A stretch of 64,000 nucleotides of DNA, taken from Fimbriosthenelais zetlandica (lineage: Eukaryota). Within the stretch, counting starts at the first letter, position 1; each line of letters begins with the position of its first letter. Position numbers and translations under genes: made by a program. Below are positions 1 through 64,000 of this stretch, piece after piece. The stretch lies in NCBI GenBank assembly GCA_977030845.1, contig OZ365113.1, positions 31,186,001-31,250,000 of the forward strand. Direction: 5' to 3'. The notes beneath the pieces are model-generated. The model was given only the letters and a program-made list of their open reading frames with translations. It was not told the DNA's origin and ran no database searches.

Positions 1-3000
1 GGAGCTTGACTGACAAATGAACCAATATTGTGCTTCTGGCCAAAGATGATTGTGGCCAGGGCGACGCCAATGTCAAAATGCTTCAGCCTCCGGTCACCAC
101 CCCTTAAAACGGACTCACGGGAGCCAAAAAAAGAAAGGCTCTGACCAGGCAAGGGAAAAAAGTGAACATTAACATCTCCAGCCGGGTAAAACGACGCCAT
201 GTCAGACTTATTAATCTCCGCCAAGATTACATTGGCAATTTTGGCCAGTTTGGGGGTTGAGTTTTTCTGTCTGATTGCCCTGTGTTCTGAGGCGGAGGCT
301 GTTCCAACTGACTGGGCAATCAATGACCAAAGTTCTAGGCATATTAACATCTTAGCCCAACTGTCACGGCCCGCAAGCCTCCCCGTAATGGGAAATTAGG
401 TCCGCTTCACTTGCCTGAAACACAGAGCTGCAAGATGTCAAAGGATGTCATTTATAATAGAGGTTTAGGGCCAGGGCCCCATCGGATCGCATTGTCTGCC
501 GTGGTCCTAATGTGAGTGGCCTCCCTTGTGTAGTGGGCATAACAGAGAATGACTGACGCTGGAAAAGAAGAAGTCATAATATGAAGCCAGGCGAAGAGAA
601 TGGAGGCACGGCTATATATATCTCACAGACCGGTGATATAAAAGTCAGGCCGCATGAGTTCACTTGTGTGTCACCGATGGGAATTCCAAACTGAAATGAC
701 AATGCGTACCTTCCCAGGAACACTTTTCCTTGAGAATAATGCTTAATTATTTAGTTATCCCGAATTAAATGAATCACGAAACTTAAGATTTCATGTACGG
801 CAACGAAATATAAAGCTGAATATTCTCTGCTAAGATTCTCTATAGAGTGGTGCATACAGATCTATATTAAATGGGGACAAAACTAATGTAAGGACAAATG
901 ACAGTGAAAACAATTGGATGCCCTGTGCCATGACACCCTTCCAATGCACATTACCCATTAGTGTTAAAATAGAAAAAGTAGAGTGAGAAAGGTTGAGGAA
1001 ATATTTGGCCATCCAATATATGCTAATCTGGCTGACACATCATGAGATGGGAGAGGACCTTGTCGGCCTTATGACTATGATAAGCTGAATGAGGGGGGAC
1101 ATCAGTGGTGGGGTGGTGGGAGGGTGGATGAGACTCATATATGCAGCATTACTGAATCATGAAAGCTACAAGCCTTTGCCCAGGTCAATAAGCAATTCTG
1201 GGCGGCCATCGGATGAGGGCGTAGCTAATTATTGTCCTTCAGTCACCGCTTGATCCAGGCAGATCAGAAGTTGTCATCACAAGTTATAGGGCGCCAGTAT
1301 CTGATGCAAGGGAGCGCCAACTGCTGACGGCCTGTTTCATCAACGGCGTCAGTAAGGGTATGAAAAAACAACTGTTTTAACAAACATGGGGTTTACACCT
1401 ACACGACTGCTTGAATCACCTTCAGGAGCTTCTAACAGAAGACGATCTGAGGTATTTCGACACAAGGAACAGTATTAGTGACTAGCCAAGACATCTTCAA
1501 TAGGACATCCGGTATATATATGAGGGCTAATTCAAAGCTTACAAAAGAATATGAAAGTTGGATTAAAATTGCAAAATACAAATGCAAAGCCTAGGTTGGA
1601 GTCAGGAAAAGTGTATGGCCTATAGCCAAACCACATGGACTTTTTCCAGGTCCATATCATAGACTGTAGAACTGTGAAAGTGACTCTCTCTGCTGGGCAG
1701 ATTGCAATTACTTGAAGCAATTACATGCATACATTGCATTGCTCATATCATAGGAAGGCTCCATGCAATGCATAGTAAATCGGAGTGGTATGTGTCAAAT
1801 GCATAGGGTATGTTAATACTGAGGATAATTAGTATTAAGGCATTAGACCATCCAATAATACTTAACAACGGTATGACCAAAATGTAGTATGATAGAGAGA
1901 CCAACTTTTCGGCAGTTAAAGCTCAGATGATATAATGGACATTGTAATGCATGTTTGAGGCACTTCGTTAGTTGGACGATCAGTGAGTGGATATAGATAT
2001 GATAGTGAAACTGGGTGTTGGATGAGCAGCCATTAGCTGGAGATACCAGTCTCATCCCAATGGCACAGGGCCCTGACACTGACTGGCCTTGTCTGGGAGA
2101 GACCAGCCTACATCTATAAGCATCTTGATGACTCTGACCTTAGCTAACTAAGTGTAGGCTGAGGGTGATCCGTATTTTCAGGTTGAATTCCCAAGAGACA
2201 GAAGTGACACCTAAAAGTTTAACTTTTGGCCTCCCCCCATCTCCCTGAATTACATGCAAACTGGCGGGTAAATGAATAGGCGCTCCTTGGTGGTTTCTTT
2301 GGGAATATTTTTAATGCATAAAAGAAAAGCTCTATTAATGAGAACTAAAGGTTGTGATGGAAAACGCCTCGAAAATAGTCAATTATATTATAAGATTTTG
2401 CATATTTTTCTTATAGGAACGACCAAATTATCAGTAGTGGCTGATGCAGTAAACCACCGAAACGGTCTGGACCCAAATTAATAGACATTTGCTCTGAGCT
2501 GAAATACTGCATTCCAAGAGCGACCAATACATGAATTTCCAGTGAAATTCAAAGAGCACACAATATTTATAGAGGCACACCTAGAAGAGCTGGCACCTGT
2601 GTCGTGAGGGCGTTAATGCCCTGTGATGAAACACGAGGTCACAGTGAGTAAGGCCCTCAGCACATGCCCTTCTACCACCTCAGGCCCTCCAGAGATCCCC
2701 ACCTCCATCACTCAACATCTAAACCACAGCAGCTAAGACCGCCATTAAGGAAGAGACCGTGAAGTTAATGGCTCTACATCTTAGAATTTATTTGATATGA
2801 ACATGAAAATATTATATTTCACAAGGTGCTTTGGTTCACAGCATAATGTTTTACAAATGAGTGAGAAATTCGAAATTCAACAGGGACCGTGAAAAGATAA
2901 TATATATGTTGCAGATTTACCAGTACATCATACCACCGCATGGGGTAAACAGTGTTCTTGTGTTTGGGCACTGATGCACAGAGTTAATTAGATCGCCATT

Positions 3001-5368
3001 AAGAGATTCAATACTTTTAACAACTTGGGAACCTTTGAACATGCTAACCTGTGTATGACCCATGAAAACATGGGCGGTGGCTGTAATCATTGAAGAGTTT
3101 ACCTTGGATATTAATTGTCTGAGAATTGTCTCAACCTTTCTAAAGAAAGTGTGGGTAAATCCAATGGTGAATTAATTACTCGAGGAAGGAAGCATGGGAA
3201 ATTGGACTGGCGAAGACGAACGGACGCCAAGTAGTGCCAAGTACTGTCCTTTCCAAGGCCCTGACTTGAATAATGATGACTTAAAGGGGGAGCTAATTCA
3301 TATAGCTTCAATCATTAAGGTATTAGATCAGCCTTGGGGGGGTCCAGGGTACGTTCCCATCATATACATAGACAATGAAAGCCATCAGGGCCTCGGAGCA
3401 ATTAAATTAATTAAGAGAGGTAGAAAGAGTCTGTCAGCAATGAAATATCATCATAATGTCTCATTTACATGCATGCCTCTCATTAGTGCCCTGTCGCTGA
3501 GCATGTAACAGCGCGAGACAAAAGGTAACATGATTCAAATGATTCACCATGTTAAGGAGGTTAATGAATTAAATGGGCTTTGAGGCCATTAAAAGAGGAG
3601 GGAGGAGCGCCAGAGAAAAGCTGCTCTGTGAGGTGGGGGACGGGGGCTCTACCATAATTTGTCAACTGAAGAACCCCATTTATTCAGTCGGTCATATGGA
3701 CATATAGATGCATTTACGAAGCTTAATTAAAAGGGAAATAATAATGGACACTCTTTAACCTAGTAAAGGCACAACATATACTGTTTTTGCTATGGGTTAC
3801 CATTGCCTTATTATTATCTTAATAGAGTGCACCCCTTTTCATACGCATCCTAAGACTGGAGGGTGGACTCTCCTACTTCTGCCAGGATGCCACCTACCAA
3901 GCACGCCACAAACTACAATAGGTATCCACTTACTTTGAAGTATGATTCCTACTTTTTCTGCTGTTTATAAAAATGGGAATATGGAAACGCTAACCGAGCT
4001 TTTAAACAAAGATAATTGCCCATCCCTGGTCGCTGTTTTATCTCGGCTTGGCAAGAGTAAAGTGCAGATGAGATGTAAGGGAAACCGTAGGCCATTAACA
4101 TCAAAACAATCCACTATATTATGGTCCATTGTTCTGTAGGAGAAATCCAAGATAATGCACCGATTTAGTTGATAAAACCTATAACTATAGCACTCCCACG
4201 CTACATGCATCTAAATGATTAACTTGAATACCACGGCAATCCAGATGAGAAGTCATTACTTCAGGTACAAAAAAAAACGAATTAATAGCTTGGATGAAAT
4301 CAGATCTATGTGCAAAATGATTCTCTAAAAGCTAGTGCTTCAGAATGTTTCTTTCGGTGATATACATGCAGGTAATTAGCAATTACCAGTGTGGTCCTAT
4401 GTATAAATGCCTAGAGTTCAACAGCCCATTGAAAAGAGAGTATGAGAGAGAACTGGGCATTAAGTAATGGCTACTGGCAAGTGTCAGTAGTATATGGAGA
4501 TGGGTCTTTGATTCAGGCAATCACAGATATGGCCTACATATTGAAGTATAAAGGTTACTAGTAAGAACATTGTATGAGGCCTATATATTATAAATCTATG
4601 TCTTAACTAATTCTGAGAACTATTCCCTATCGGGTACACAGGTATTATAGATTTAACTACCAGCAACCAGTGTGTGGGGATTCACAGGGAAACAGCCTTG
4701 TCTGGACAAAGGCCATGGGAACACATTGACTGAGTATTTTTTTTGCCTACAAAGCTGGAGGTAGGGGATAGTAACGCTGATACTAGTATTCCTGTCATGC
4801 TGTCGCCCCAATGTAGTACTATACCGTAGTAATCGTAGTAGTCCCCAGCCAAAGCAACCACCGGTCCAGTCAATGGAAACAACCCCCTCCTCCCTCCTAC
4901 CTACCCAACCTCTCCATTCACTCCAGTCACTGCCAACAGGTTATCTTCGCGAAGGGAAATATTCGCGGATGGTCCCCCGTGAGGCAAACCTGATTGGGCA
5001 TTTTTCACAGACTCAAAATTGTACTGAGGAATAAATTAAAATTCATCGTTCCAACACTTATTGCGCTGAAAATTGCCATAAAAAAACCCAGAAAAAATAG
5101 ATCATACATAATATTTTATTTGTTATGCAATCATGGAATGCATCAGGGTAGGGGAGATGCGAGGTATCGATCTGCACATTGGAGCTTAGAGTTTTTGGTG
5201 GGGTGCAAATATTTCAGGCAGTGAAGATTTCATGGGGGGACATGACTGGGTTCCTTTGATGCAGCGAATGTTTGGTATTGGGGACACGTCACAGGTCACG
5301 TGGTCAGAGGTAGGGGTGTTTATCGTGAGGGGTGGGCGTGGCTATCGTAACGATGGGATGTAATAGAA

Positions 5369-5385
5369 GGGGGGGGGGGGGGGGG
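5369..5385 (+). repeat. poly-G run (G17)
   Basis: Direct reading. Similar runs at 5553-5563, 19250-19266, 23036-23053, 27840-27853, 32283-32296, and a C21 run at 11220-11240. Confidence 0.95.
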
Positions 5386-5884: not shown

Positions 5885-6070
5885 GGGGCCTGTTTCACTA
5901 AAATGCAACATGCCCTTTAAAACCTAGGGATAGTTAAAATATGCATTAATCGAAAAAAAACTTTCAATTAAGTTTCTTTTTCATGTTCACTTCCAGTGCC
6001 AGCAGAGTAGCCTACTTGTATCGCTCAGTGCGGTTATGATGGTCTCCAAATATGTTCTGAAACAGACCCT
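5885..6070. mobile_element. degenerate MITE-like element (~186 bp), PIF/Harbinger(Tourist)-like termini
   Basis: Left end GGGGCCTGTTTCA (5885-5897); right end TGAAACAGACCCT (6058-6070), whose reverse complement matches 11/13. The same left terminus recurs at 36355. No clean TSD seen. Confidence 0.4.
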
Positions 6071-14300: not shown

Positions 14301-16788
14301 TTGTGGGTGGATTAATAACCACTAAAAACCACTGATCACTTTTATTTCAACCTTAATTAAAGGAGAATGATACGCTGAGATCACCTGAACATAATGCCCA
14401 TCAACTTAGACAATGACCTCTCAAAAAACCGTATAACATTGGGAGATATTATGTTTCAGATTAACAATGGTATGGACCATTATTTTAGAAATATCTCAGC
14501 AAGACCCAGACAACAATTCCAACTTAAAAACAAGTGCAACGCAGAAGGAAGAATACGGTGGGAAATAGTGCATCATAAGATTGCAAATTGGGTATTTGTT
14601 AGGGGAAGTCCCTCCCCAATCAGCAGTACAATTGTTATATTCTGACAGGACACCCTGACCTTAATTACATGTCCTGGCCGCATCCATTTTAACATAGGGA
14701 GCACTTTATTGAATATTTAACAAATGCATTTTCGAATCCAAATGAAATATGGATAATTAACATTGGAGAAAAAATGGAAGAGATACTGTCGGGAGGACAT
14801 AGGCCTACTTTTCAATTAAGGTGTTGAAACTGCAGATGAAATCATTCAGGAATCATTCATGCTTCGTCATTGCTCGACAAATGATGTGTAAAGCTTGACT
14901 CCCCATTTTACTAAACATACTTCAAATATTGATTAATTTTGGCCATGTATATGAACAGACCCCATTGATTTTCCTTCTATTGATTCGTCTTTTATCCTTA
15001 GAAGCATGGCATAATGCAAGAACTTCATATTCATGATAGTCGAAAGAGAGGCTCCGACACAAATAAATTCAATTTCAAACGTTTTAGGGAAATTGCCATT
15101 TCCATTTACTTGTCACCATAACTTCAATTTACTCACAAATTAATTAAAATTCCAGGTTAATACGTTTCTTTGGGCTCACAGGGGAGAGGAGGAAAAAATG
15201 TCCACCCCGCAAATTCTATTCCTTCCTGACAAAAGGAGAAGCTAAATAAATTAATTGACCGATATTAAGCACTATCAGTCAGGCGAAGTCAACTTTATGA
15301 AACGCATGGCAAATGATCTTTCAAATACAAGTTTTAGAATCGGAAAATAATTCTTATTGCTGCATGAAGTGAGATTAATTTAATTATCCGAGAGGAAGTA
15401 GTGTTATTATAGTTGAACAAGGGCTCAACGGGAGGTTTTTTAAAAAGATCTCATTTCCATTTCCGAGGGCAGCCCGCGCACAATTACATCAATATTTTCC
15501 CGCCCCAAGTCAAAATTTGAAAAATCTAGAAACATTTTGTTTGCTTGCGCTCGCTTGCTTTCTGAGCGACTTAAAACACAATGCGATAATTTGAGCACAA
15601 ATAAAATATCTATTATGTTTATATCAAGTGAGCTTCAGCGGGCGATTGGACTCAAATTCACGAGCACATTAAGGGAGCAGCTCATCAAGTGTCCTGATTG
15701 TGAGTTTTGGGAAAAATACACTTTTCTGCAGGGAGGTGGGGCTAAAAACGAGGGCCTTTCATTTGTGAGAAAGAGAGAACAAAAGCTATTATTGGCCATT
15801 GTTGATGAACGGAAGGATCGCATTGATAATAACGGGCGTTGAAATTAACCTGACGCCAATTACCATAAGAGCTTTTGCATTAGGCTTGAAAAACATACAG
15901 TTTGAAAGTTAAAATGAAATCCAATACGACATGGATTGTCATCGGAATAATTAGCCGAGGCCCTATTGAAATTGGCAAGTGTGGCTTGAAGGCGAGGCCA
16001 TGATACCATCCACAAATACATTAATGGTTGGGATATTATTATTTCCTTTTGAACTGTTGAAACCCGGCAATTTATGTAACTTCCTTGAATGAAAAGCAAC
16101 TGCCCTTTGAATTGTGCGTCAAACATTCAATAAATAAGAGTTTCGCAGTTTCGTTTCAATCCTGAAAATGAATCAAATGTCCGGCAATGCAATGGCTTCT
16201 TTCATATGTTTTCGTCAGATCTTTCACCAAACTTTAATTAGTTTTCAATAAAAGAAGAGCATTAAAGCTTTGAAAGGTAATATGGAAATCGTGATCTCAC
16301 CTGACAGGTATAAATGAGAGGCAGGCACGTTTGATCCTTTGCCATTAGTAATTGTAGACAAAGGATGGATATAACAGTCTTTGCATCCTCATGGCCTCTT
16401 AAGTGATGGTACAGGCCATTCAATTTTAAAAAGTGGGGATGCAGCTTAAGGGGGGACAGACGAACAATGGACTTCCCTCCATGAAAACATGGGATTCCAA
16501 TATAATATAGATCTTAATATTTCTTCATTAACAAAATAAAACAAGCAGACTTCAAAGCAAAATGTGTTACTCTGAAATCTCCGATATCTTTGTGTGTCTC
16601 CAGCTGAAATTGCTTAAGTAAAACAGAAGAGTATGTAACTAAAGGCACTTACATTGCAGGGTCCAACACCAGCTCTTAAGTAATAATTTCTTAAGTAATA
16701 ACTTAACCCTAACGATTCTTATGCTAAGCTTACTTGGATCATTTCTGGTCACAACCGCGAGAGCTTACCTATAGGATCTCACACATAC

Positions 16789-17356
16789 CTAATTTAATAG
16801 AAAGAGCATCTATTTCTTCTAATGACTTGGTCACCTCCTCTTCGCTAGTGACCACTTTCTCAATTTCGCCGATTTTGAAGCCGAAATCTGCCTCGTCCAG
16901 GTCGATCGTCAGCTGCTCCAGTTTGTAGCTGGCTCTCTTTGTGGCAAACCGTGCAAACTCTTTGATTTCAAACTGAGCCAGTACTTCACTCATTGTGTGT
17001 TGCTTCTCTTTGGCATTGTCAGGCAAGAAGAAATGGTGGAGCATTGCTATGATGTCACTCTCTTTTTCTGTCTCAATATACTGGCCCGCAGTGAGGCTGT
17101 CAAACTTGTTGGCTGGTGGGCTTTTCAACTGCCAGCAGCCATCTCTTTGGCGTAGCCAATGATCGGCTAAGGTCAGCGTATGAGATGCTACGTCATAGTA
17201 AGCATCAGTGAAGGTCTTTGTCTGTAAATGTGTAGCTCCCAGCTTCCCAAGTTTCTCTGTAATGTCATCCGGATAAAGAAACTTCCTCTCTACTTCGATG
17301 ACCCTGGGTTTTTTCACTTCCTGTGCTGCCATGCTCAATATGATTCTTCTCCACAT
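16789..17356 (-). CDS. THTPA: Thiamine-triphosphatase (CYTH-domain), first coding exon; CDS incomplete at the 3' end
   Basis: Translation has the CYTH ExExK motif (IEVERKF), then FTDAYYD, LADHWLRQR, WQLK, FATKRASYKL, IDLDEADFGFKIGEIE and ends ..SIKLG, collinear with vertebrate THTPA as recalled (IEVERKF, ADHWLR, VDLDTADFG, ..SMLG). Phase-1 donor TTAG|GTATGT at 16789/16788 falls where the vertebrate coding intron is recalled to be. An in-frame TGA at 17425-17423 limits the start to ATG 17356 or ATG 17332. Confidence 0.95.
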
Positions 17357-17429
17357 CAAGAGGTTAAATTCTGACCCCGGCCTTGCAACGTGGGTGTCCG
17401 GGGTTAGAATGGGTCCAACGGGTCAGGCT
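17357..17429 (-). other. 5'-UTR part of the thtpa exon with upstream splice acceptor
   Basis: Minus strand TTTTCTCATATTATTTTCAG|AGCCTGA: polypyrimidine tract and CAG ending at 17430. Implies at least one upstream non-coding exon. Confidence 0.75.
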
Positions 17430-18004
17430 CTGAAAATAATATGAGAAAAGTCAAATTGGTGGACAGAAATATCAGTGGCTAAATCAGGAAGGAAAACCAT
17501 TCTTGAGAACGATGCATGCATGATTGGGCCTCATTACTGGATGCATAAGAATGCAAGAAGTATTGAATCGAGAACTGCACTACAATGTCCTATATATTTT
17601 CATATTCAAGTACGCTGCAACCATAAGGAAAAATAAAACACTTCACCACAGGAAATGGAGTCTTTGTCTTGCTGATTGCCAAGAAATTTCCACTTTCTTG
17701 TCTGATACCAATGGTAGATGAATTCATGAATATCATATTGGTGATATCTATTTAGAAAGACATGTACCATGTGTAAATAGTAGAGAAAATGACATACCAC
17801 CGAGTATCCATCAGCCATTGTCTCCCAAAAATAGATCCACATTTTGTTGCCAATATGAGCAAAAGTAGGCGAATAACATGGATAGTGTTTACTTTATGTT
17901 ATGCCTTACAAGAACCTATTGCCTGGTAAATACCGGTAAGGACTTCCAGAACGGCTCGGGGGCATGTATAGACAATGATAATATGTGAAGATGCCTCACA
18001 ATCA

Positions 18005-18018
18005 ATTACCATGGCAAC
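18005..18018 (-). promoter_or_regulatory. RFX X-box-like site
   Basis: Minus strand GTTGCCATGGTAAT versus consensus GTTNCCATGGNAAC (one mismatch). Confidence 0.4.
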
Positions 18019-21000
18019 AATTGAAGTGATGACACAATGATATTTTGGAGGCACCACCTGCCAGAGGTGCAAGAGATGGGGGCAGGGACCAGGTGGATTG
18101 GGGCAGGGTGGGGGTCAGTGGCGACAAACCTATGAGGAAATCTAGGTGTACTTGATATAAGGAAAACGTGCATGGAATTACGCTGTTACATTCATGTAGA
18201 TCACATTCATATGGGAACATTGTTCAGACCGATTCATTTCACCTTATGACATAGGTATGGTAATTTTCTACGCAGTTTCTCCCGGGGTACTGGTGCATCA
18301 AAGAGCTCAGAGTTATTTGGTCTGTGACTTTTTGGCTGCCCCCTATTCACCCTGAAAAACTCCCAACGCGAAATGAGAATGAAAAGATTTAGAGCAAATT
18401 AATATTTAATCTTTCTTATTTCTATGGCCGGATAGACAGGCCTCGAGAGATCAAAGGGTGTGTGTAAATTGCGAAACAAATTATTTATTTTAATATTGCA
18501 ACACTCTGCTTCTATTTATCCAATGTAATAGGTTGGTAATATAGAAGTTTGTGAGAGTAGCTGGCAATGAATAGGTGCTGGAACTGTGTAAATATGCCAT
18601 GTCAGCAACAAGGGGGAAATCTTGCTATTTTTTACCATCTGGTTCAACAAGCTCTCGGCCGAATAATTGCTAATGTATACAGATGTGATGCCAACAAAGT
18701 ACACATTTTCAAGCTTATCCATTGAAACGTCTGTAACAAACCTGACTGTAATAGAGGCCTATGTACACTAAGCCTTGCAAATACTTGTTCAACAAAGCTC
18801 AACATTGACTACACCTCACAAGAAAAAAAAAGCACAATGCAAGACACAAGTGCTTTGCCCACTCTACATTGGTTTTGTGAGAGTGTAGACTCCATATATG
18901 AACATAAAGACTTGCTTGATTTGAGAACGCTTCACTCTCAGTTGTCCCATACATACATTCCAAAGGCTACACCTTGAGCCCACAGAAAAGTCTAATTGCC
19001 CTTTTTGATAGAGCCACATTCTGAGCAATGTTTGCATGAGCTTGAGAGAAGGTCCACAAGAACTCGCAGCGCAAATTGTGGATTGTTCCTTATACAAACA
19101 GGCCTTGGTGATGGAGTAAAGGGTATGAGGAGAAATGCTAAACTGTTCTTGATAAACTTATTACACAAATCAGAGGGGAGGATGGGCGAGGGGGGATTGT
19201 TTGATGAGGGTCAGACTGAGAAGATCTATTGATGGGGGAGGGGGTGGGAGGGGGGGGGGGGGGGGGTCTTATGATCCTATGACACTGGTGGAGGCATTGA
19301 ACATAATGGCTGGATTGTGTAGAGCTTTATGTACCTCTACTTTCTTGACCTGTCCTTCACTTAATCTAGACTATAGACAAATCCACTGCATCCTCTTACC
19401 ACACCATGAGTCACCTACATTTAGATTTGCTGGCTTTAATCCTTTCTAAAAATACTGTGTCAATCATTCTGCAACTCTTTCTTACTTTAACTCAACTTAT
19501 TTAAACCATGTTTGTATATGTGTATAGACTATGGATACACATATTAGTCATTAGTACGGTGTACATGTATGACACTTGTTTCACTCGAAGATCTTAACTT
19601 TGTTCTAATATAGCGTTCGGACGAATCTCAAAGGATTCTTTGAGGGGATGTCTATTTGTATAACTTGCTTCTAATCATGCTGGGGAATACTCACTCGGGG
19701 ATATCCTGTCACTTAACTTTGCAAGGTGCATGTCCCAGGCTAAGTCAATAGATTGGTACATGTCAGTAATAATGGCTGTCCGGACGTCATCAAATACAGA
19801 CAGTGAAGAGCCTTATCTTCAGGCCCTGCGGCTAAATACACTGGTATGGGTCGGCCCAGTTCAAACCAACAAAATAATGAGTAACCAAATCTTTTTGCCG
19901 GGCACTCACAGATCTCTTCAACTTCTAATGTTTTTTTTTTGGTGGGAAATACTTGGAATCTATTCAGGATTAAAGGGATTATTTTTAATGCCTAACACAT
20001 GTGGTGGCGGTTATATATGTTTGTGTCCATGCCAAAGGTGCATGGACAGGACATTTCATAATGGGGACATGACATTTTGAGTAGAATGATTGAAATTCCC
20101 ATGCATAATGATGTAGGGTCAGAGACTTGATATCTTTGCCACAGAAATGTTCAGTATAAATTTCCTGGGTCAATAATTAACTGACATTCGATGCCATTCT
20201 GTTCATGAAAAGGTACATGTAACCAATCTGGGTAAAATCTTTAATCATTGAAATTCCGATGGAAAATACAGCACCAGACTCGATATCTTCACTGGAATAA
20301 ATTAACTTATATGGGACAAAAAACAATTGCTAAAATTTAATAGCAGTGCCACGGGAGGAATCAAACTAAGACAATGCTGGAGGGCATGTACATAACGTGG
20401 TCATGTCCCAGCCCGGATATTTTCAATGTAGCAAGTATTCCTGACCCCATTCCACCAGCTTTCCATCAAACAACAAGAAAGCTACCTTTGTGACAGCCCA
20501 ACTCATTTCCTTTCTTCAGAGGTTGTGTAGCTCGCTAGTTCGAGGCCCTCCTTGGGTCAACTTACAAAGGATGCAGCTCGCTGAGGGTAATTAAGCATTG
20601 TGACCTCATTGACCCTGCCAGTGGTAATGATGCTGAGAGTGTGGCTAGCATGGTGACCTGCTCTGAGAAAGGGTCAGTCCATTAGATGCTACCGTAACAC
20701 CGCCATAATGAATGAGGCCAGGACCTGGTGAAAGCAGGCCAATGTAGGCTGCAGCCAATACGCCAGCTTCATTAGCAGAAACAACAGTCACAATACTATA
20801 TGGAAGAGTAATGAGGCAGAAATCAGGCAGCTGCGCAATAGATTGTCATGACCTTAGCAAAGGTTTACCTGATTCTCAAACTAAGGGGTCAATGAGACGT
20901 CGGGGCTCTGGATCCAGCAAGACAAAGAAAACCGTTTAAGGTCAGCGGGGAAAAGTAAGGCATAATGAATGGGTGGAATACTTCTATCCGTCCACCAGAG

Positions 21001-41001: not shown

Positions 41002-41221
41002 GACAAGCAATCTACATGAATACAGTAATGGCCACGCCAGTGACAAGTAATTTATATGAATACAGTAATGGCCACGCCAGTGACAAGCCAATTTATATGA
41101 ATACAGTAATGGCCACGCCAATGACAAGCGATTTATATGAATACAGTAATGGCCACGCCAGTGAATACAGTAATGACCAGGGACAAGCAATCGAAATGAA
41201 TACAGTAATGGCAGCGCCAGA
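41002..41221 (+). repeat. minisatellite, 40-41-bp unit, ~5.5 copies
   Basis: Unit GACAAGTAATTTATATGAATACAGTAATGGCCACGCCAGT at 41002, 41042, 41082 and 41123, a partial copy at 41163 and a diverged copy at 41182. Confidence 0.95.
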
Positions 41222-55000: not shown

Positions 55001-57902
55001 GGCAAGGAGCTACGACTGAATAGAACTTTCTTCCACATTGTAATAGATCTTAGACATATACACACACCAGCACAACTTTCCAATTATACCTACTTATTAC
55101 AACATTGCATGCTATAGAATATCAAGAAGGAAGCCTAATTAGGATAGGACAATAAGGAAAGGCAATTGAGGCTAACAGCAATTCCTTGTGGTCATGGCTT
55201 TTTTAATACAAAACTCTGGGCGAGCTAAAGCAATGTGAGTAGTATATGAGATAGGCACGATAGGCTGGCAATCAGTGCATTATGTATAATGCACCTAATC
55301 CATACTTGATTGTCTCATTTGTGTGATATCTCGTATCAGTCCATTTCTGCCTTCATTTATCTCTCATCTATTCAGGGATGATTGTGGTGGGGGGTGTGGT
55401 GGTGATGGTCAAAGTGGTGGCATTGGAAAGCTATAGTTCTGGGGGCCACACCGTTTCATATATTGCCTATACCACGTACTACCCCCCACCCACTGACAAC
55501 CTATTTTTTCCAGGATGATACATACATCCCTTTCTCAATAATTAGTGTCATTCCATTTGCTCCCGGCTATTGCCTATTGTTAGAATCTTGATTGCGGCTC
55601 ATGCTTTTGTTTCACCTGTTACCATAGTGAATCATGGATTCCCAGCAGCCCAGATGAATGGCAATGACACAGTTTCCTGAGACAACAAGGGGGTTATTCC
55701 TGTCGCTTCTGCCTAGTACCGAGTTGACCTCTTCATCTCCCTCTTCTGTCAATCCACCCAACTACACCAAGCGAGGAACCATTTCCATCAATCTCTTTTT
55801 GAATGGCCAGATCCCTGAGGGAGTTTCACGGGTTTTAAGGGTGGTTTAAAAGGCTGCTTTTTCATCGCCATCTATTTCCTTTTATCTTATTTCCTTAATA
55901 CTCCCACATGTATAGGTTATTTAAGAGGCAAAATATACAAAAAGTTCCGGTGATTATCTTTTGTGATAAGCTAAGGAATTCATAAATTAGCGACTGGGCA
56001 CAAACACAAATTTCAAGATCAAAGCAGTGGGCTTGATACTACACATTTTCCCCTCCAACATTACCATGAAAGAATTCATATATTACGATCAAAGACTTGA
56101 TTTAATTAAACATAATTTTTGCATAAAAAAATCATAGATGAACTTATTCTTTGATCTTCCCAATATAACATAGAGACAATTATATAAATGTTATATTCCT
56201 TTGGATTTTTTGTCTAAACTAGACCACAGAAATAAACTAAAGTGTCATTCAGTGTGGACCTCTAATATGGCATAACAAAAATTGCTCTTTCAAATAAGTG
56301 TCAACTACAGTGGTGTTAGACTGAAGCACTCCACCCACGAGCCAGCAGGCCTGCGGACATTTTGCCAAGAGGGAACTGACACCCCAATCAATGTGTATAA
56401 TTGCCACACATTGATAATTTGGAAATTGCTTGCCCCACATAGACTTATCATAAATCCACATCTAATTGACCCAATTTCTGTATACTGGATCCATGGTCAG
56501 TCGGGGGCCGCGGGTACAATGATCTGGGTAGGTAATTAGCAAGCGTGAATTGGGTGCCTGTTTTGTGTCTCTGGTCGAGGCAATATCGTGCTGAGGTCAT
56601 GTTACCCCATTGACTTCTCCAATATGAGGGGATGGGATTCTTATGGCTGTCACTGTGCAAGGATAATTAACATCGTATTCGCACTATATATGTGATCAGA
56701 AATAAAAAAGCAAAGAAATTTCTTTTTTCTCAAAGAGAAGAGATCACATTTAGAGAGATCGTTTAGGGGCGAAATTAAAAATTAATTATATAACATTTTA
56801 CCATAATTAAGATAATTAAAAAAAGATAATTATGTTGTCTACTGGTTTACATATTTTATCATTCGTAATTCCTATTTCCAGTATAATGACTGCATGTGTG
56901 AAAGCATTAACCCAAAACAAATATATGGCACTCCCCTACTAAAGAATCTACTTGTATGGTAGTCCTAACAAGAATTAAAATTGACCTCTTATCAAAGTCT
57001 TCGCTATCTTCAACTAAACAACTTTATGCCTTCTCCCTTTCTATCCAGATCTTTACTTGTATTTAAAGTTTAAGTGAGATTAATTCTAAATTTTAATTAT
57101 CTCAGTCCCAATAAAGCTATATTAATGGGTATGTGCAACAGAGGGGCCTCCCAAAAATCTAGATTTATTTCATCTCAAAGTAACAACTCTTGCTGGTGTT
57201 GGAGGCTATCATTAAAGAGGCCTAATTCCCTGACAGCCCGCCCAGCCTCCAGGGGTCGCTATGATATAGAACAGCCTATAAACTATCGGGGCAAATTGAC
57301 ATTAATCAGACAAGCGCTAAGGATTTTTATCCTCCAAATTTGAGATAAGAGCAATAGGCTTAAGAGCAGAAGGCAAAAAGAAACAAGTCACTTTTTTGTC
57401 AATTCTTGATACAATTAATCAGTGTGTGCGGGTATAACGATGGGAATTATATTTTATAATTATAAATATAATGGGAATTGTAGGCCTAATTATGATTTAA
57501 TCATCAAGCACAATGCTCTTGCACTATAGTTGTGCAATAGGCCTACTACATTGAAAATATAGACATGAGGGCTATAGGCCTAGTTTAGACCTGAAAGAGC
57601 AGCCTCCCATTGTGAGAATTCATCCCGATATTAATAAAATTGTATGAGTAGTAACATATAGTAGCAATATGCATAATTATAGACATTCATATTTTGATAA
57701 CATGTAGGCTAGGCCTACTCATCCTGTAGGATAGGCCTACTAGGCCAAGGGCCTATAGCTTACCTGAACCGGATAAGATATTAGCACCTACCGGTAGCCT
57801 ACCTCGTCGACAGAGATATTAATTGAGAATTTATGCTCAAATCAATGCATGAGTTTAAAATAGGCCTACCATAGGCCTACGTTTTGTTCAATGGGTAACA
57901 AC

Positions 57903-57946
57903 CATAGATATATAGTCTCTCCACGTGTGGAGACTATATATCTATG
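57903..57946. mobile_element. 44-bp minimal non-autonomous DNA transposon (hAT- or P-type) with perfect TIRs and 8-bp TSD
   Basis: CATAGATATATAGTCT...AGACTATATATCTATG are perfect 16-bp TIRs with CA...TG ends. GTAACAAC flanks both sides as a direct repeat (57895-57902 and 57947-57954). Confidence 0.8.
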
Positions 57947-58389
57947 GTAACAACTGATGCAGTGACACCCAGCTGTGACAGACTATGGGAAGGCAAATGC
58001 GCACATCTACCTTACCTAGGCCGAGGTCTACATTGCGGATATCTTTCAGGCAGGCCCTATTCATGTAGTAGGCCTACATAGCCTACCAAGGTAGGCATAT
58101 TCTTTATTTCTTAACTTTGAACCAATATAGTATCATTTTTAAGTGAGGGAAATGTTCCATTGCTATAAATTAAACTGTGTAGTCTACAATACATCTGACT
58201 TTCCATAGGCTGCAGCACATGAGCAGTGCTCAATCACATGGTCGGGGAAAACAAGACCCGGCATCACTCTTTTCCAGTGTTGCACCGTAATAACATGATT
58301 TCACATCTCCTATCAAACTCGCTTCACTTCTCCATCCTCAAAATATTCCACATTCCGAATGTCGTTGACATAGATCAATTAAAACTTAC

Positions 58390-58480
58390 CCAAAATCCTA
58401 GAAAACCATGCGGTGGAGTCTCGTTCAGTAAACAGTGACGGCCATGTTGTATCCATCCATCCCATAATAGACTGCAGCCA
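58390..58480 (-). other. candidate non-coding first exon, minus strand (possibly thtpa exon 1); TSS approximate
   Basis: Donor TGG|GTAAGT at 58390/58389. YY1-like AACATGGCCG at 58448-58439 inside the exon. CpG-containing context. Confidence 0.45.
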
Positions 58481-58760
58481 GGGTCGGGTCGGTGCACCGA
58501 GAAATACACGCCCTTGATTTTCCACAGTAATTAATTTGTGAATAATTGATTGACAACCTCAAATAAATGTCTCTCATTTGAGAAGGGATTCTATAGGCAC
58601 AGTGCTAAATATCTAGAGGAATTTGAACACTTGGAAGCGGACTGATTATTTTTGGCGGAGAAGAGCGGTGAGCAGTGAGTGTGGATTGATCGTCTGCAAG
58701 TTGTGTGAGTGAGTTGACACGAGAATCACAGAGCCGCGTTCTCAACATAAGGACAAGTTT
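58430..58760. promoter_or_regulatory. candidate bidirectional promoter core
   Basis: CpG-containing block between two divergent donor-terminated segments. Contains CACGCCC (KLF/SP-like, ~58507), TGATTGACA (PBX-TALE-like, 58547-58555), TTTTGGCGG (E2F-like, 58650-58658) and a YY1-like site. Confidence 0.4.
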
Positions 58761-58767
58761 GGAGTTG
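58670..58767 (+). other. candidate non-coding first exon, plus strand; TSS approximate
   Basis: Donor TTG|GTAAGA at 58767/58768 downstream of the putative promoter core. Confidence 0.35.
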
Positions 58768-59142
58768 GTAAGAGCTATTTTCCGCTATGTCATGTTTCTG
58801 ATAATTACGAAACTGTAATTAGTCGCCATTATCATTGACTCGTGGAACGAGAAGGGTGAATGAGTGAGAGGAGGAAGCAAGGGACCATGTCAAACGCTCA
58901 GGTGGGTTCGGTGAATTCACGTGCTAATTTGGATCTCCATTAGCGGTGCCTGATGACCATTACTTTTTTGGTAGAGTCAGATGGCAGGGAGTTGGAGGGG
59001 TGAATGTGTTGGGCTCGTTCCCTAGATTTCATGTGATGCCAATGCTAACCTAGATAATCTCAGCTTCCAGACGGTCTGGCATTTTTAATTCAAGATTTTA
59101 AATCGCTTTAGTTTATCATTGATGAGCAGCTGGGGTGGGTCG

Positions 59143-59228
59143 GGGGAATCCCCAGCTGGCACGTGTCGGAACTATTTTCTCAAAGGGGTTCCCCATATAA
59201 AACGGGGGTTTCTCTTACGGAAACCCCT
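59143..59228. promoter_or_regulatory. cluster of kB-like sites
   Basis: GGGGAATCCCC (59143-59153), GGGGTTCCCC (59185-59194), GGGGTTTCTC (59205-59214) and minus-strand GGGGTTTCC (59227-59219). Confidence 0.4.
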
Positions 59229-60186
59229 CCATGCTGGCTAGGCAATTGCATCTCTGAATCAGTGAATGTAAAGGATCCCCCTTCTTTTGCCTGCTAGTGT
59301 AAACGTCAACATGGCATTGGCTAGACAGGCTAGCAAACAGGAGTTGAGGGTGGGGGGTGCTGTCTCTAGCCATCACCCCGGCTTGACCCAGTTCACCTCC
59401 CCGGGTCTTGGGCCACTCATTGCGGTCAGCGTTTGGCACTGGACTCGGAATGTTGATGGAGAGGAGCAGCATCAGCAGCAGTGAGTGGTGCGATATGGGT
59501 TTTCGGTCTGTTCCAGAAAGGCAATCGTTCCACTCGAGGCCTAACTGTAGGCCTATCGCGTTTGGGAAATGATTGCAGCAGGGCAAGAGGACCCATTCAT
59601 TCAAACTCAAAGACACGAGTGTGTGATGTCATGGCATAGGCCCCCATGCCTAGGTCTAGGCTTAGACCATTTAAAAGGTCTAGGCCTGTAGGCCTACCCC
59701 AAAAAGGGGGTGAGATATGGACCGTTTGGGTGATCACAAATGGGCGGTTCTGGACCGATCACTTCCCTAGCCTACCACACTTTACCCCCACTGCTCCTAT
59801 TCCCACTTCCCCATCCCCAGCCTCCCACGCCCCCCATCCCGCCTGCTCCTCCCACCACAGTCTAGGCTCGCCCCCGCCTTTAGTCTAGTCACTTGTCGCG
59901 CTCTCTAAGCCCATAAATACATGTCAGTCTGACAGTTTCAGACGAGTCAAACTTTTTGTGTGGTTGGAATTCAATGCCTTTCATGCTTCTTGTAACCAGT
60001 TGTAAACTTGTGGTAGGAAAACATGTATGACCTAAAGGTGTGGACACTAAAAGAAAGTGTTATTTAGGCCAATGCCTGTAGGGCCTACAGGCTACCTAGG
60101 CCTAAAATTCATCTTAGACTAGGTTAAATATTATTAGGCCTAATTATTGAAAAAAAATTGTATTCACTGTCCCTTCATTGACTTTA

Positions 60187-60210
60187 TTTTTTTTTTTTTT
60201 TTTTTTTTTT
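60187..60210 (+). repeat. poly-T run (T24)
   Basis: Direct reading. Confidence 0.95.
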
Positions 60211-61626
60211 ATTAAACCAATTTTTTTTAATGTTTTCATGACCTATCCATTGTCATTGTTTTTTAACATAAGAGTAGGGCTCCCATTTGTTTGTGAGTGC
60301 CCGGCCCGGGATGACGAGGACCTGTGGTGAATAAAATACCAGGAAGAGTCACTAGCCTTGGTTAATAGAATGAGAGAATGATTGGCTTCTTAAAGACCTT
60401 TTTATCACTGATTACCTTAGCCTGACCATTGATGACTAATGATCTTGAATTCCGATACACTCTGGCTTATTCATCCGTCGTGATTGTAAAGGAAACCTCC
60501 CAGAATTGAGTCAGGGTTCATAAGACATCTAATTCAGATTTCATTATGAGACACTTTCATTCTCATACGCCTGTAACTTATTGGTAAAATATTTCCTGAT
60601 AGGCCTAGGCCAATATTTTATATTATAATAGGCTATACAAAGTTGACACCATGCTGACATGAGTTAGGCCTAATTAATTACATGTATAAATGATTCAATT
60701 TTTCTTTCTCTTTTTTCCCCTTTTTTTCTTTTAGTAGGGGCCAAACTTTTCTACGCCTTAAGCACTGCCCCAAATTAACCCCCTCCCCTTTCTCCCACCC
60801 CACCCCCAACACACCCACCCACTCCAATTTCTTCTGCTCTGATGTATACTAAAGGGATAACGATTTATACAAAGCATCCATAAAATGGCCGACTTAGCCC
60901 ACAAGAGACAGTGTTATCAGGCCTTCCAAAGTTGGCCCAGTCGTGACGAAAGCAGCATTCCCAAGATCAGGAAGACACTGGCCATTTAGTCGTACAAAGA
61001 ACCTTCTTTACCCAGGCCTTTTTCATCAGCACTACTGTAATGACTTCGATTAATTTCCCTCTGCCTTCTATCTTGTCCCTCCTCCTTTTAATTTGCCAGG
61101 ATTTTCGCCCTCCACAGTTCGTGGCCTCAGATTCCATGCCCCACCCCCTCCCCTCCCACTCCCCAAATCTTGGTTTTGTTCCTTTTAACAAAACACTTAA
61201 GGAATGGCTGGATTTGCCACACTTTTACTTTTCATAAAAGCTCTATGGCTATTTCAATGTGTGCGTATGTATGAAGAGATAGCGGAAGGGGAGAGCGACT
61301 AAAGAATAGGAAAGAGAGGCGAAGGAAAAAAAGCGTTTCCAATCAGTGGCATTATTTTCCAGGCGTCATATGAGGAGGGGAGAGGCAAATATGAGCATAA
61401 AGCATTGACGTTTATGTATTGATTGTCTTGTGCGGTGTTGCAGGCGTCGTTAGAGGCTAGGACCGTGCTCAGCACACATGCCCCGATCAATGCAGGTAGA
61501 TCAAGTAGCCATTAGACAAATTGAAAGCGCTAGGAAAAAAAAATTGGGGGGACGAAACAATGGGCCCCTTCTGTCGACGTGTTGGTCTGCTACTGCTAAC
61601 CTTCCAACTTTGTCTTTTTCCAAAAG

Positions 61627-61803
61627 GTCACGACCTATAACGATACCACCCGGATGTGACGTCACGGGGGGAGCGACACCGCTGGTGATGGACGTTAATG
61701 AGTGATGGAGGAGAACGAATAGGAGGAAGAAAATCAGAAATAGAGGGAGGAGAGAAAATGGCGAGAATACAGTATAGAAGCAGACCCGGACCATTAGAGC
61801 GAG
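61627..61803 (+). other. candidate internal exon (177 nt) of a plus-strand gene; 5'-UTR, possibly containing the start codon at 61758
   Basis: Branch point TGCTAAC (A at 61599), polypyrimidine tract CTTCCAACTTTGTCTTTTTCC, AAG ending 61626, donor GAG|GTAAGT at 61804. All three frames contain stops, so it cannot be fully coding. AAAATGG at 61758 opens MARIQYRSRPGPLER up to the donor (phase 1). Confidence 0.55.
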
Positions 61804-61895
61804 GTAAGTAGGCTGTGACGTATGCTTCACGTCATGACACCGCGCGTCATTAATGAGAATATTGTCTTTGCGATTAGTATCGATCTCTGCCACCC

Positions 61896-61911
61896 TCGCC
61901 TGGGGGCGCTG
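61896..61911 (+). promoter_or_regulatory. CTCF-like motif
   Basis: TCGCCTGGGGGCGCTG versus CCRCCAGGGGGCGCTG (two mismatches). Confidence 0.3.
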
Positions 61912-62381
61912 ATGAGCGAGAGCATTGACAATTTGCATGGATATTATTATGCGCGGGCATGAGCCCAATATGAGTGGGGGAACAGCAGGAGTGGGCATCT
62001 AATTTGTGCCTTCTTCACTGCTCCTGGGCTATATTTCTCTATCTGTATTTTCATGTCTTTCCCTGCCCTCTGCATTTTTTATTATTTAACCTCCAATGTT
62101 GTTAACATGGAATCTCTCATAGATCTATTCTCTTTTCCCTTTGATGTAGGCTATTGATATAATGTCATACTTTTTATTGTTGATATTTTTTCAGGAGTAA
62201 TACCTTTTTCAGTAAGCCTACCGATATGCTTGACCAATGTGTGTTTTTTTTCAAGAATTTTTTTTTCTTCGGTAGTATGTTTTCTCTTGGTTTTATGTAT
62301 TCCTATGCCCAATGAATTATAGATGATGTAGGTGATGTCTCAAAGCATTATGGTTCCACTGAAAATCTTGTAGCCTATATA

Positions 62382-63030
62382 GGGGTGGGGGATGGGAGTG
62401 GGGGGTTGGTGAGCTGTTAGGGGTGTGGGTGAGGGGTGAGCTATAGTTGGGGGGTGGGGTGAGCTATTGGGAGTGGGGGGTGAGGGGGTAAATGGCTGTG
62501 CAGTGCCTGTGTTGGCCATACACCGTGTCTGGGTGACATGATCGGCAAGGCACATGCTCAGAGAATGGCTGGTGGCGAACATGCGATACCCCAAGAGAGC
62601 TAGCATTCACATTACTCATCTCACATCTGTACATTAAGGCCAATGGGGTGGAGTGGGGTGTGGTGGCGGGGTTGGTGGGTAGGTGAACTGGGGGGTGGGG
62701 GTGAGGTGGGTGGGTGGGTGGGGGAGATATGGGTTGTTGGATGGCATCTATAGTTATGTCTTATAAAGACGGTGGTTGGGTGAGTGGTGGGGGTTTGAGA
62801 GGCGATGGGGTCGGGGAAAGGTAGGGCGATGGTTAGGTAGGGAAGAGATATAACATAAAAAAAATGAAGAGGAGACGGAGGGAAGGGGGTTGGAGGAGGT
62901 TGAATGAATGGGAGTATGAAAATATTGCTGAAACAGTGATGGAAATGATGAGAGGGCCATGTGTGGGAATGAATGGGTTGGGGTGGGGGTGGGGGTTGGT
63001 AGGGGGTTGGGGTTGGTAAGGGATGGGGGT
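62382..63030 (+). repeat. G/T-skewed low-complexity tract (GGGGT/GGGTT variants)
   Basis: Dozens of G3-G6 runs on the plus strand, interrupted at about 62490-62640. It generates spurious Pro/His/Thr ORFs on the minus strand. Confidence 0.9.
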
Positions 63031-64000
63031 TGGTAGCTGTAGGGTTGAGAAGAAAGGGGACATGAGAGGTCATATGAGGGACTGACGGTGCATGCTCTGC
63101 TTTAGTACCAAGTAGATTAGTGCACATGTGAAACCCTACACTTCACCATGTCCAGAGAGGTGTCTCCAATACGAACACACACCCCTACTCAAACATAACC
63201 CAGTAGAAAATGTCCCTGAAAGAACCAACAAACCCAAATACACAGCCACCCAATACATATCAACCTACCCTAAACATACCAAATAAATATAGCTGAATGA
63301 ATGATGTGAGTAAAATAGTCTTTTGAGACATTGAATCTTTGTCAATGACAAATGCCACCTCGTGATGTTAATTAGGTGAGGAAGATGCATGTGGCTGATC
63401 ATGATAGATTGATATTACATGCGTGTTCATTGATGTTGAGAGGGTGGGTAGAAGCGAATGCAGCGTTTATGCTATGATTATTAGTACATTTATTTAGAAT
63501 ATAGTGACGTGTCCGCCCCATCCCACCCCATCCCCTCATTTGTTTCCATTTGATTGCACCTCCCTTATCCCATATAGATGGATCGATTATTGCGTTATAA
63601 TCCACGTTCCACATTATTACTTTCATGTGAATTGCCTATAAGCCCCCAACTTCTGCCTGCGATCCCCTATGCTTTCTACCAGTGGCAAATGTGTATTCAA
63701 AGAATATCCCATTAGCGCATCCGAAATAAGTGCAGCACGACTGTGTTTCTTTTTGTGATTTGATGCAGGGACGGTAGTCATAATCACTCACTATTTATCT
63801 CTTTGAAACCCCTACTCTGTCATAGACGGAAAGATAACTAAACAAGAAATATCTTTGGCACTTGTGCATTTTGTGTATTAAATGATAAATATTATGTTTT
63901 TTTTTACGCAAAGTGCTTTTCATCACTAATTCATAAAAATCTTGTGCCATATTTTAATTTATTTTGAACATATACATACATTTGACGTCTATTACTCAAT

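What the first reader, a model, noticed from the sequence alone, without database searches (positions are those of the whole stretch)
1..64000. Window looks like a genomic regulatory block with thtpa as a bystander gene head-to-head with a developmental regulator (possibly Zfhx/zfh2)
Seen: 64 kb with one coding exon, many moderately GC-rich blocks packed with TAATTA/TTAATT/TAATGG/GGATTA motifs, and no intact transposon ORFs. Established: human THTPA is a compact gene lying head-to-head with ZFHX2 at 14q11.2, and bystander genes in regulatory blocks carry inflated introns holding enhancers of the neighbour. Inference: thtpa here has introns of ~41 kb and >16.7 kb, and the divergent plus-strand transcript from ~58.7 kb may be the Zfhx orthologue, which would make this an ancient deuterostome microsynteny. 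No Zfhx coding sequence is visible in the window.
Basis: partly seen in the sequence, partly recalled or inferred. Interest (0 to 1): 0.8.

Follow-up and report, generated by a model that had tools for sequence, protein, structure and literature searches.

The report
Enzyme gene amid conserved regulatory DNA
This 64-kb stretch holds one exon of a housekeeping enzyme gene (thiamine triphosphatase) next to non-coding DNA that is better conserved than the gene itself, which fits enhancers of a neighbouring developmental gene, probably ZFHX, although that neighbour and the proposed promoter could not be checked here.

Summary
The only recognisable coding sequence is one THTPA (CYTH-domain) exon on the minus strand, with its catalytic motifs intact. 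Its splice sites on both sides are shared with a second species.

The new result is a comparison with the only relative sequence I could obtain, 6-kb Logan contigs. There THTPA is 60% identical in protein and 41% at four-fold synonymous sites. Even so, 43% of the 4.8 kb upstream of the exon aligns in the same order. Identity is 75-81% overall, up to 97% per 100 nt, with exact runs of up to 68 nt. These are true conserved non-coding elements.

TAATTA is 2.4-fold over-represented. TAATGG and GGATTA are not, and the verified conserved blocks are not TAAT-dense.

Skate and human show THTPA overlapping ZFHX2 head-to-head.

Not supported:
- The 58.7-kb site as the ZFHX promoter. No RNA runs were listed, and the published bilaterian Zfhx3/4 promoter element is absent.
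- The intron lengths.
- The "deuterostome" label. Other notes call this genome an annelid.

Verdict: a probable new member of a known kind.

The parts
16787..17431 (-). Main THTPA exon. The 3' splice site (TTATTTTCAG|) is at 17431, followed by a 75-nt 5'UTR part. The ATG is at 17356, the CDS runs to ..IKLG, and the 5' splice site G|GTATGT follows 16787. The in-frame read-through stop is at 16769-16771.
   Evidence: Pfam CYTH at 1e-19 and PDB ThTPase at 1e-31. ExExK (EVERK), WLRQR and WQLK are present (translation; residues as listed in bioRxiv 10.64898/2026.02.04.703868). The acceptor is conserved in L001. The donor is conserved in L001/L005/L006 and lies at the same codon in L002, L003 and L008.
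17749..17898 (.). Weakly conserved non-coding block (68% to the relative).
   Evidence: blastn of L001 against the window; alignment A1.
18005..19239 (.). Conserved non-coding element 1. It is 75% identical over 1,268 aligned columns. The core 18647-18746 is 97% identical, and 18656-18855 is 92%. Exact runs: 68 nt (18642-18709), 30 nt (18826-18855) and 25 nt (18722-18746).
   Evidence: No ORF and no Rfam hit. RNA fold z-scores are -0.73 and +1.85.
19704..19796 (.). Short conserved non-coding block (83% over 93 nt).
20417..20973 (.). Conserved non-coding element 2. It is 81% identical over 561 columns, with exact runs of 38, 38, 29 and 25 nt. It is dense in homeodomain, nuclear-receptor half-site, E-box, Sox/TCF and Meis-like words (16.5 per 400 nt against a window mean of 6.0).
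58385..58775 (.). It has a minus-strand donor TGG|GTAAGT at 58389 and a plus-strand donor TTG|GTAAGA at 58768. Unverified.
   Evidence: The sequence and a donor scan only. CpG o/e reaches 1.0. There is no transcript evidence, and the Zfhx3/4 promoter element is absent.
61201..62100 (+). The most CpG-island-like patch of the window (o/e up to 1.21). It has TGACGTCA and CCGGATGT motifs, AAAATGGCG, and a short ATG-started open stretch ending at the donor GAG|GTAAGT at 61804. This is a second, equally unverified promoter and first-exon candidate on the plus strand.

Best explanation
The window is one flank of a large cis-regulatory landscape (a genomic regulatory block). A small housekeeping gene, THTPA, sits in it as a bystander.

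**Shown here**
- THTPA's main coding exon is flanked by conserved splice sites.
- The DNA just upstream of that exon carries dense conserved non-coding elements. They are under much stronger constraint than the exon and show no sign of coding or of RNA structure.

**Inferred**
- These elements are enhancers of a developmental regulator, not of THTPA.
Vertebrates have the same relative arrangement, where THTPA overlaps ZFHX2 head-to-head.
- The need to keep the enhancers linked to their target would then be what has kept THTPA beside ZFHX.

**Open**
- Where THTPA and ZFHX transcription start, and how long the THTPA introns are.
For: - THTPA identity and intact catalytic motifs.
- A conserved acceptor 75 nt upstream of the ATG, and a conserved donor straight after ..KLG, at the same codon position as in hare, pearl oyster and another invertebrate.
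- The relative's contigs align to window 17749-20973 in the same order and with similar spacing. The blocks reach 75-81% identity, 97% per 100 nt at best, with exact runs of up to 68 nt.
- The exon is only 68% identical in DNA and 60% in protein, with 41% identity at four-fold sites. The DNA between the blocks does not align.
- 2,035 of 4,769 nt (43%) of the comparable stretch are conserved.
- The conserved blocks have no ORF, Pfam or Rfam signal and no RNA-structure signal.
- The window has almost no internal repeats and no transposon ORFs. TAATTA is 2.4-fold enriched.
- In skate, zinc-finger and homeodomain exons lie on the strand opposite THTPA, 6.5 kb upstream of its coding exon and inside its annotated range. 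Human shows the same overlap.
Against: - I could not read the flank, so the ZFHX neighbour rests on an unchecked AI note. Its strand, and what lies in between, are unknown.
- Conservation could be tested on only 4.8 of 64 kb and against a single relative species.
- Three attempts to fetch more of the relative found nothing, as did two metagenome scans.
- The verified elements are not TAAT-dense.
- The bilaterian Zfhx3/4 promoter element is absent from the window.
- Weak but conserved donor-like sites lie inside the conserved blocks at 18350 and 20485. Part of the blocks could therefore be a THTPA 5' exon or a non-coding RNA.
- No THTPA-ZFHX adjacency was seen within 10 kb in three invertebrate loci, which is too short a range to count against it.
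Confidence: 0.55

Rival explanations
1. The conserved blocks belong to THTPA itself, or to a non-coding RNA. They would be a proximal promoter, 5' untranslated exon(s) or a conserved lncRNA within 1-4 kb of the coding exon. In that case the nearness of ZFHX has no regulatory meaning for this window.
For: The conserved acceptor at 17431 requires an upstream exon. Donor-like sites conserved in both species lie inside the blocks on the THTPA strand, at 18350 (6.4 and 7.9 bits) and 20485 (6.0 bits). No transcript data could be obtained to exclude transcription.
Against: Exact runs of 68 nt and 97% identity per 100 nt, at a divergence where synonymous sites are saturated, are far beyond what promoters or UTRs of housekeeping enzymes usually show. 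The blocks are CpG-poor, at o/e 0.33-0.43 per kb. The 317 nt directly upstream of the acceptor are not conserved. There is no RNA-structure signal and no Rfam family. The conserved donors are weak compared with the exon's own donor, which scores 8.3 bits.
Confidence: 0.15
2. This is a regulatory block, but its target is another developmental gene. That gene could lie between the window and ZFHX, or below coordinate 1.
For: The conserved elements are real. Nothing in the window names their target. High motif density also occurs downstream of THTPA, at 8.9-9.5 kb. The Zfhx3/4 promoter element is absent.
Against: THTPA-ZFHX2 linkage in skate and human, together with a ZFHX gene reported on the matching side in this genome, makes ZFHX the most economical target. 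No other regulator is known nearby.
Confidence: 0.2
3. This is an ordinary gene-poor stretch. The TAAT excess is a genome-wide compositional habit, and the giant-intron bystander picture comes from seeing only one exon.
For: The verified conserved blocks are not TAAT-dense. One mollusc THTPA locus also shows a 2-fold TAATTA excess (L003). No genome-wide background was available.
Against: This cannot explain collinear non-coding blocks that are more conserved than the coding exon. It also cannot explain the near-absence of repeats and transposon ORFs over 64 kb.
Confidence: 0.08

Closest known systems
Genomic regulatory blocks with bystander genes (Engström et al. 2007; Irimia et al. 2012, PMC3514665; Touceda-Suárez et al. 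2020, PMC7530604)
   Same: A small, functionally unrelated housekeeping gene is embedded among dense conserved non-coding elements. Linkage to a transcription-factor gene seems to be kept over very long evolutionary time. The region is poor in genes and transposons.
   Different: The target gene, its contacts and enhancer activity are not shown here. Conservation was measurable on only 4.8 kb and against one species. I found no paper that names the THTPA-ZFHX pair as an ancient microsynteny, but the relevant supplementary tables were not readable.
Vertebrate THTPA-ZFHX2 locus (human 14q11.2; little skate contig JAMYXN010000189.1)
   Same: THTPA's upstream side faces the zinc-finger homeobox gene on the opposite strand. 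THTPA transcripts overlap ZFHX2. The intron right after the ..LG codon is at the same position.
   Different: The vertebrate genes are compact, about 2 kb in hare and snake, with ZFHX exons 6.5 kb away in skate. Here the nearest reported ZFHX sequence is about 240 kb from the THTPA exon. AP1G2, the vertebrate tail-to-tail neighbour, is not in the window.
Bilaterian-conserved Zfhx3/4 promoter element (Frith & Ni 2023, PMC10735318, Fig. S16)
   Same: It would be the expected landmark of an invertebrate Zfhx promoter. It is reported from lancelet, acorn worm, sea urchin and abalone.
   Different: It was not found in the window. Its three core motifs match only at chance level and never together. 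The element was not reported for annelids or for vertebrate ZFHX2.
Ultraconserved / highly conserved non-coding elements of vertebrates, insects and nematodes
   Same: Exact runs of 25-68 nt and at least 92% identity over 200 nt, between species whose synonymous sites are near saturation. Sox, E-box, homeodomain and nuclear-receptor-like words are present.
   Different: Only two species were compared. Depth within the clade is unknown, and no match was found in mollusc or vertebrate THTPA loci.

Membership tests
Thiamine triphosphatase (CYTH superfamily) | CYTH domain with the ExExK metal-binding motif and the basic residues that hold the triphosphate (R55, R57, K65 in mammals) | tested here: met
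   Pfam PF01928 at 71 bits. PDB 5a65, 2jmu and 3bhd match at E 1e-26 to 1e-31. EVERK, WLRQR and WQLK are visible in the translation. The residue list comes from the bioRxiv paper.
Thiamine triphosphatase (CYTH superfamily) | C-terminal helix (K-L-x-x-Y-L-x-x-x-x-P-x-x-Y) encoded by a last exon after the ..LG intron | tested here: inconclusive
   The donor is conserved. No last exon was detectable by tblastn or by a tail profile anywhere in the window.
Genomic regulatory block with bystander gene | Cluster of conserved non-coding elements spanning the region | tested here: met
   Met for the only testable stretch, 17.4-22.2 kb. There 43% lies in collinear blocks of 68-83% identity with cores at 92-97%, against 41% identity at four-fold sites. 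The other 59 kb could not be tested.
Genomic regulatory block with bystander gene | A developmental regulator (the target gene) inside or next to the block | not testable with these tools
There is no ZFHX coding sequence in the window.
Genomic regulatory block with bystander gene | Bystander-target linkage kept across distant lineages | tested here: inconclusive
   Shown for skate and human. For this genome it rests on the unchecked note. Three invertebrate loci show nothing within 10 kb, which is uninformative.
Genomic regulatory block with bystander gene | The elements act as long-range enhancers of the target and not of the bystander | not testable with these tools
   This needs reporter assays and chromatin-contact data.
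   No RNA or DNA runs were listed for this sequence. Only consensus donors are seen. A rival CpG-rich candidate lies at 61.2-62.1 kb.
Bilaterian Zfhx3/4 promoter element (Frith & Ni 2023) | YY1 site GCCATTTT, then TAATTAGCnnAAyAAA, ATATCnnnTTTTCATTT and GTTATTTTTAGC within about 90 nt | tested here: not met
   Single motifs match at chance level (3 against 2.05 expected, and 3 against 1.92). The combined patterns give 0 matches.

The most novel reading that the evidence does not exclude
THTPA-ZFHX is an unreported microsynteny dating to the bilaterian ancestor. In an annelid, as in vertebrates, THTPA lies head-to-head with the single Zfhx gene. It has been held there for more than 500 million years because Zfhx enhancers, including near-ultraconserved ones at 18.5-18.9 kb and 20.4-21.0 kb, sit inside THTPA's expanded 5' intron.
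Probability: 0.35. Interest if true: 0.55.

Novelty: new member of a known kind. Interest (0 to 1): 0.42.

Why it matters
If the ZFHX link holds, this gives a concrete and testable reason why a thiamine-metabolism gene has stayed beside a neural zinc-finger homeobox gene from worms to humans. It would also supply two sharply defined, near-ultraconserved candidate enhancers (window 18517-18855 and 20418-20973) for reporter tests in a spiralian. Highly conserved non-coding elements are, to my knowledge, much less studied in spiralians than in vertebrates and insects. The kind of arrangement, a genomic regulatory block with a bystander gene, is well known and hundreds of such pairs are published. 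The value is therefore that of a clean new example, not a new principle.

Tried and rejected
- **Transcript evidence.** Two run searches, RNA and then any kind, listed nothing, so read laying could not be used.
- **More of the relative's genome.** I used window ORFs as probes for spurious ORFs called on Logan contigs. ORFs 61501-61998(-), 33091-33594(+) and 59215-59616(-) gave no hit. Walking from L001's terminal ORF returned the same contig. The three contigs L001, L005 and L006 come from one species and all stop about 270 nt 3' of the exon.
- **Exact scans of two CNE cores in JGI metagenomes.** Both gave 0 matches.
- **DNA comparison with Pinctada, another invertebrate and skate THTPA loci.** No non-coding conservation was found.
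- **Last THTPA exon.**
  - tblastn with 18 homologues found nothing.
  - A profile of C-terminal tails gave a best hit at 16638-16570 (E 0.67). It is the polypyrimidine tract of a candidate acceptor and was rejected.
  - Three short-intron models do not match the tail profile.
- **A weak THTPA-like hit at 30432-30620.** Its translation is full of stops, so I rejected it as chance.
- **ORF 61501-61998.** It has a sub-threshold Ac81 hit (18.9 bits against a cut-off of 25) and no homologues, so I treat it as chance.
- **Vertebrate neighbours AP1G2 and JPH4.** Neither is in the window.
- **ZFHX within 10 kb of THTPA in hare, snake, Pinctada and two other invertebrate loci.** None was seen, and the range is too short to be informative.
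- **Structured-RNA reading of CNE 1.** Rejected.
- **Taxon.** I could not establish it from this window. THTPA is about 38-40% identical to both mollusc and vertebrate proteins.


Full report
**What is in the window**

The window has no N and a GC content of 41%. Its overall CpG o/e is 0.48, which fits a methylated animal genome.

Among 40 ORFs of 90 aa or more, only the minus-strand ORF 16769-17359 is recognisable. It matches the CYTH domain (E 1e-19) and the solved mouse and human thiamine triphosphatases (E 1e-31 to 1e-26). Its nearest atlas clusters are all thiamine triphosphatases.

The translation keeps ExExK (EVERK), WLRQR and WQLK. These are the metal- and triphosphate-binding residues listed for THTPA in bioRxiv 10.64898/2026.02.04.703868. 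I therefore read it as an active-type THTPA and not as a pseudoenzyme.

Nothing else in the window looks coding:
- The other 39 ORFs reach no Pfam cut-off.
- Three of them have no homologue in libraries of 5.8 and 1.8 billion proteins.
- Rfam finds nothing.
- Skate ZFHX exons, and hare and snake AP1G2/JPH4, find nothing in the window.
- Only 286 nt repeat within the window.

**Gene structure of THTPA**

The best relative is a Logan protein, P0001, at 58% identity. It comes from three runs of one species, held as contigs L001, L005 and L006.

Both species have a pyrimidine tract plus CAG about 75 nt upstream of a conserved MWRR start. Both also have TTAG|GTAKGTGT immediately after ..(K/E)LG. 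In the relative, the read-through tail after that point differs by a frameshift between individuals, so it is not coding.

Hare, pearl oyster and another invertebrate have a GT donor at exactly this codon position. In hare, the annotated protein continues from a further exon.

So the exon is internal, with an intron on each side. I could not find the last exon. tblastn with 18 homologues failed, a profile of C-terminal tails failed, and three short-intron models failed. I could not place the 5' exon either.

**The main new result: conserved non-coding elements**

L001 carries 5.1 kb upstream of its THTPA exon. It aligns to the window in the same order and with similar spacing:

| Window coordinates | Identity | Aligned length |
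|---|---|---|
| 17749-17898 | 68% | about 150 nt |
| 18005-19239 | 75% | 1,268 columns |
| 19704-19796 | 83% | 93 nt |
| 20417-20973 | 81% | 561 columns |

The cores are far tighter:
- 18647-18746 is 97% identical, and 18656-18855 is 92%.
- Exact runs in the first element reach 68, 30 and 25 nt.
- 20767-20866 is 93% identical.
- Exact runs in the second element are 38, 38, 29 and 25 nt.

The coding exon is only 68% identical in DNA and 60% in protein. Its third codon positions are 55% identical and its four-fold sites 41% (14 of 34). The sequence between the blocks does not align at all.

In total, 2,035 of the 4,769 comparable bases (43%) lie in conserved blocks. The blocks have no ORF. Folding of the first element's core gave no RNA-structure signal (z -0.73 and +1.85), and the blocks have no Rfam family. 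They are somewhat richer in GC than the gaps between them (0.415-0.47 against 0.355-0.40).

These are true conserved non-coding elements. Their density is what a regulatory block predicts.

**The motif claim**

TAATTA is truly over-represented: 91 copies against 38 expected after dinucleotide shuffling within 500-nt bins (z 7.2). It ranks first among all 36 A/T-only hexamers, followed by TATATA (1.9-fold) and by its overlapping relatives ATTAAT and AATTAA. TAATGG and GGATTA are not enriched.

Raw counts are higher in AT-rich bins (rho -0.29), but the observed/expected ratio rises with GC from 2.2 to 3.6.

The verified conserved blocks are not TAAT-dense, at 12-14 per kb against 18 for the window. 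The second element is nevertheless very rich in a mixed set of homeodomain, nuclear-receptor, E-box, Sox/TCF and Meis-like words (16.5 per 400 nt against a mean of 6.0).

The Pinctada THTPA locus shows no TAATTA excess, while another invertebrate locus shows a 2-fold excess. No genome-wide background for this species was available.

**The ZFHX neighbour**

No ZFHX coding sequence is in the window, and I could not read the flanks.

Two lines bear on the neighbour. The first is the vertebrate arrangement, now seen in tool results and not only recalled:
- In little skate, a minus-strand gene with C2H2 fingers (L004 20889-21983) and a homeodomain (13951-15636) lies inside the annotated range of plus-strand THTPA. 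The THTPA coding exon is at 28462-29184.
- In human, rs4982766 is listed as both a THTPA intron variant and ZFHX2 missense V1545A (PMC11352382).
- In hare and snake, THTPA is a 2-kb gene lying tail-to-tail with AP1G2.

The second line is an earlier follow-up of this scan, s1-189671. It describes an ORF "inside a large intron of a ZFHX gene" 179,663 nt beyond this window's end. That is the upstream side of minus-strand THTPA, the same relative position as in vertebrates. I did not and could not check that note, and its strand is not given.

**The proposed promoter**

Positions 58385-58775 do carry a minus-strand donor (TGG|GTAAGT at 58389) and a plus-strand donor (TTG|GTAAGA at 58768). CpG o/e reaches 1.0 there.

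The strongest CpG-island-like patch, however, is 61.2-62.1 kb (o/e 1.21). It has TGACGTCA, CCGGATGT, AAAATGGCG and an ATG-started stretch that ends at GAG|GTAAGT at 61804. Several other CpG-rich patches lie between 24 and 35 kb.

Frith & Ni (2023, PMC10735318, Fig. S16) describe a Zfhx3/4 promoter element conserved from human to lancelet, acorn worm, sea urchin and abalone. Its core motifs match the window only at chance level and never together.

So either the Zfhx promoter lies outside the window or the element is lost in this lineage. The element is not reported for annelids or for ZFHX2.

Weak donor-like sites conserved in both species lie inside the conserved blocks, at 18350 and 20485. 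A proximal THTPA 5' exon therefore cannot be excluded. The 317 nt directly upstream of the acceptor are unconserved and the region is CpG-poor.

**Taxon**

From this window I cannot tell, because THTPA is about equally distant from mollusc and vertebrate proteins. Several independent follow-ups on other windows of the same genome call it an annelid (unchecked). If that is right, shared THTPA-ZFHX linkage would date to the bilaterian ancestor.

**Novelty**

Genomic regulatory blocks with bystander genes are well established (PMC3514665, PMC7530604). I found no paper that names the THTPA-ZFHX pair as an ancient microsynteny, but the supplementary pair lists were not readable.

**Verdict**

This is a probable new member of a known kind. 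The conserved elements are solid. The ZFHX target is likely but unverified. The promoter and the intron sizes are open.

Noticed in passing
window 57481-58076 and 59548-60672 (also scattered: 13078, 14800, 21172-21418, 30942, 31807, 34015-34028, 44950, 49226): The palindrome TAGGCCTA occurs 25 times against 0.9 expected (z 25). Eight copies lie in 57.48-58.07 kb and six in 59.5-60.7 kb, on both sides of the candidate promoter, often as TAGGCCTAC or in tandem. I have no explanation. This is the subject of the scan's note s1-223682.
   Followed up: partly
window 61201-62100: This is the only clearly CpG-island-like patch (o/e up to 1.21). It has CRE- and ETS-like motifs, AAAATGGCG, and a short ATG-started open stretch ending at a strong donor (GAG|GTAAGT at 61804) on the plus strand.
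   Followed up: partly
window 62400-63130: G-rich low-complexity DNA on the plus strand (GC skew 0.24), with 17-35-nt GGGGTGGG-type tandem units. It produces the proline-rich minus-strand ORF 62621-63127, which has no Pfam match.
   Followed up: partly
window 41002-41164: A tandem array of a 40-nt unit (4.1 copies, 92% matches). It is the only sizeable internal repeat, and it creates the repetitive ORFs 40807-41190(-) and 41016-41312(+).
   Followed up: no
window 61501-61998 (-): A 165-aa ORF with a sub-threshold match to baculovirus Ac81 (18.9 bits, cut-off 25) over a hydrophobic stretch. It has no homologue in the 5.8-billion-protein search, so it is probably chance.
   Followed up: yes
L001 6013, L005 3360, L006 5038 (3' ends): All three contigs of the relative, from three sequencing runs, break at the same place about 270 nt downstream of the THTPA exon. 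This suggests a repeat or a heterozygous structure there.
   Followed up: no
L004 10001-29184 (little skate): The annotated THTPA gene range spans the zinc-finger and homeodomain exons of the opposite-strand ZFHX-like gene. THTPA is therefore annotated with a 5' exon lying beyond the ZFHX 5' exons, the same overlap as in human.
   Followed up: partly
L002 10985, L003 10606, L008 10549, window 16787: The intron after the first base of the Gly codon in ..(K)LG is at the same position and phase in hare, pearl oyster, another invertebrate, the relative and this genome. ORF-called invertebrate THTPA proteins that end ..KLGRYQSQL are read-throughs into this intron.
   Followed up: yes
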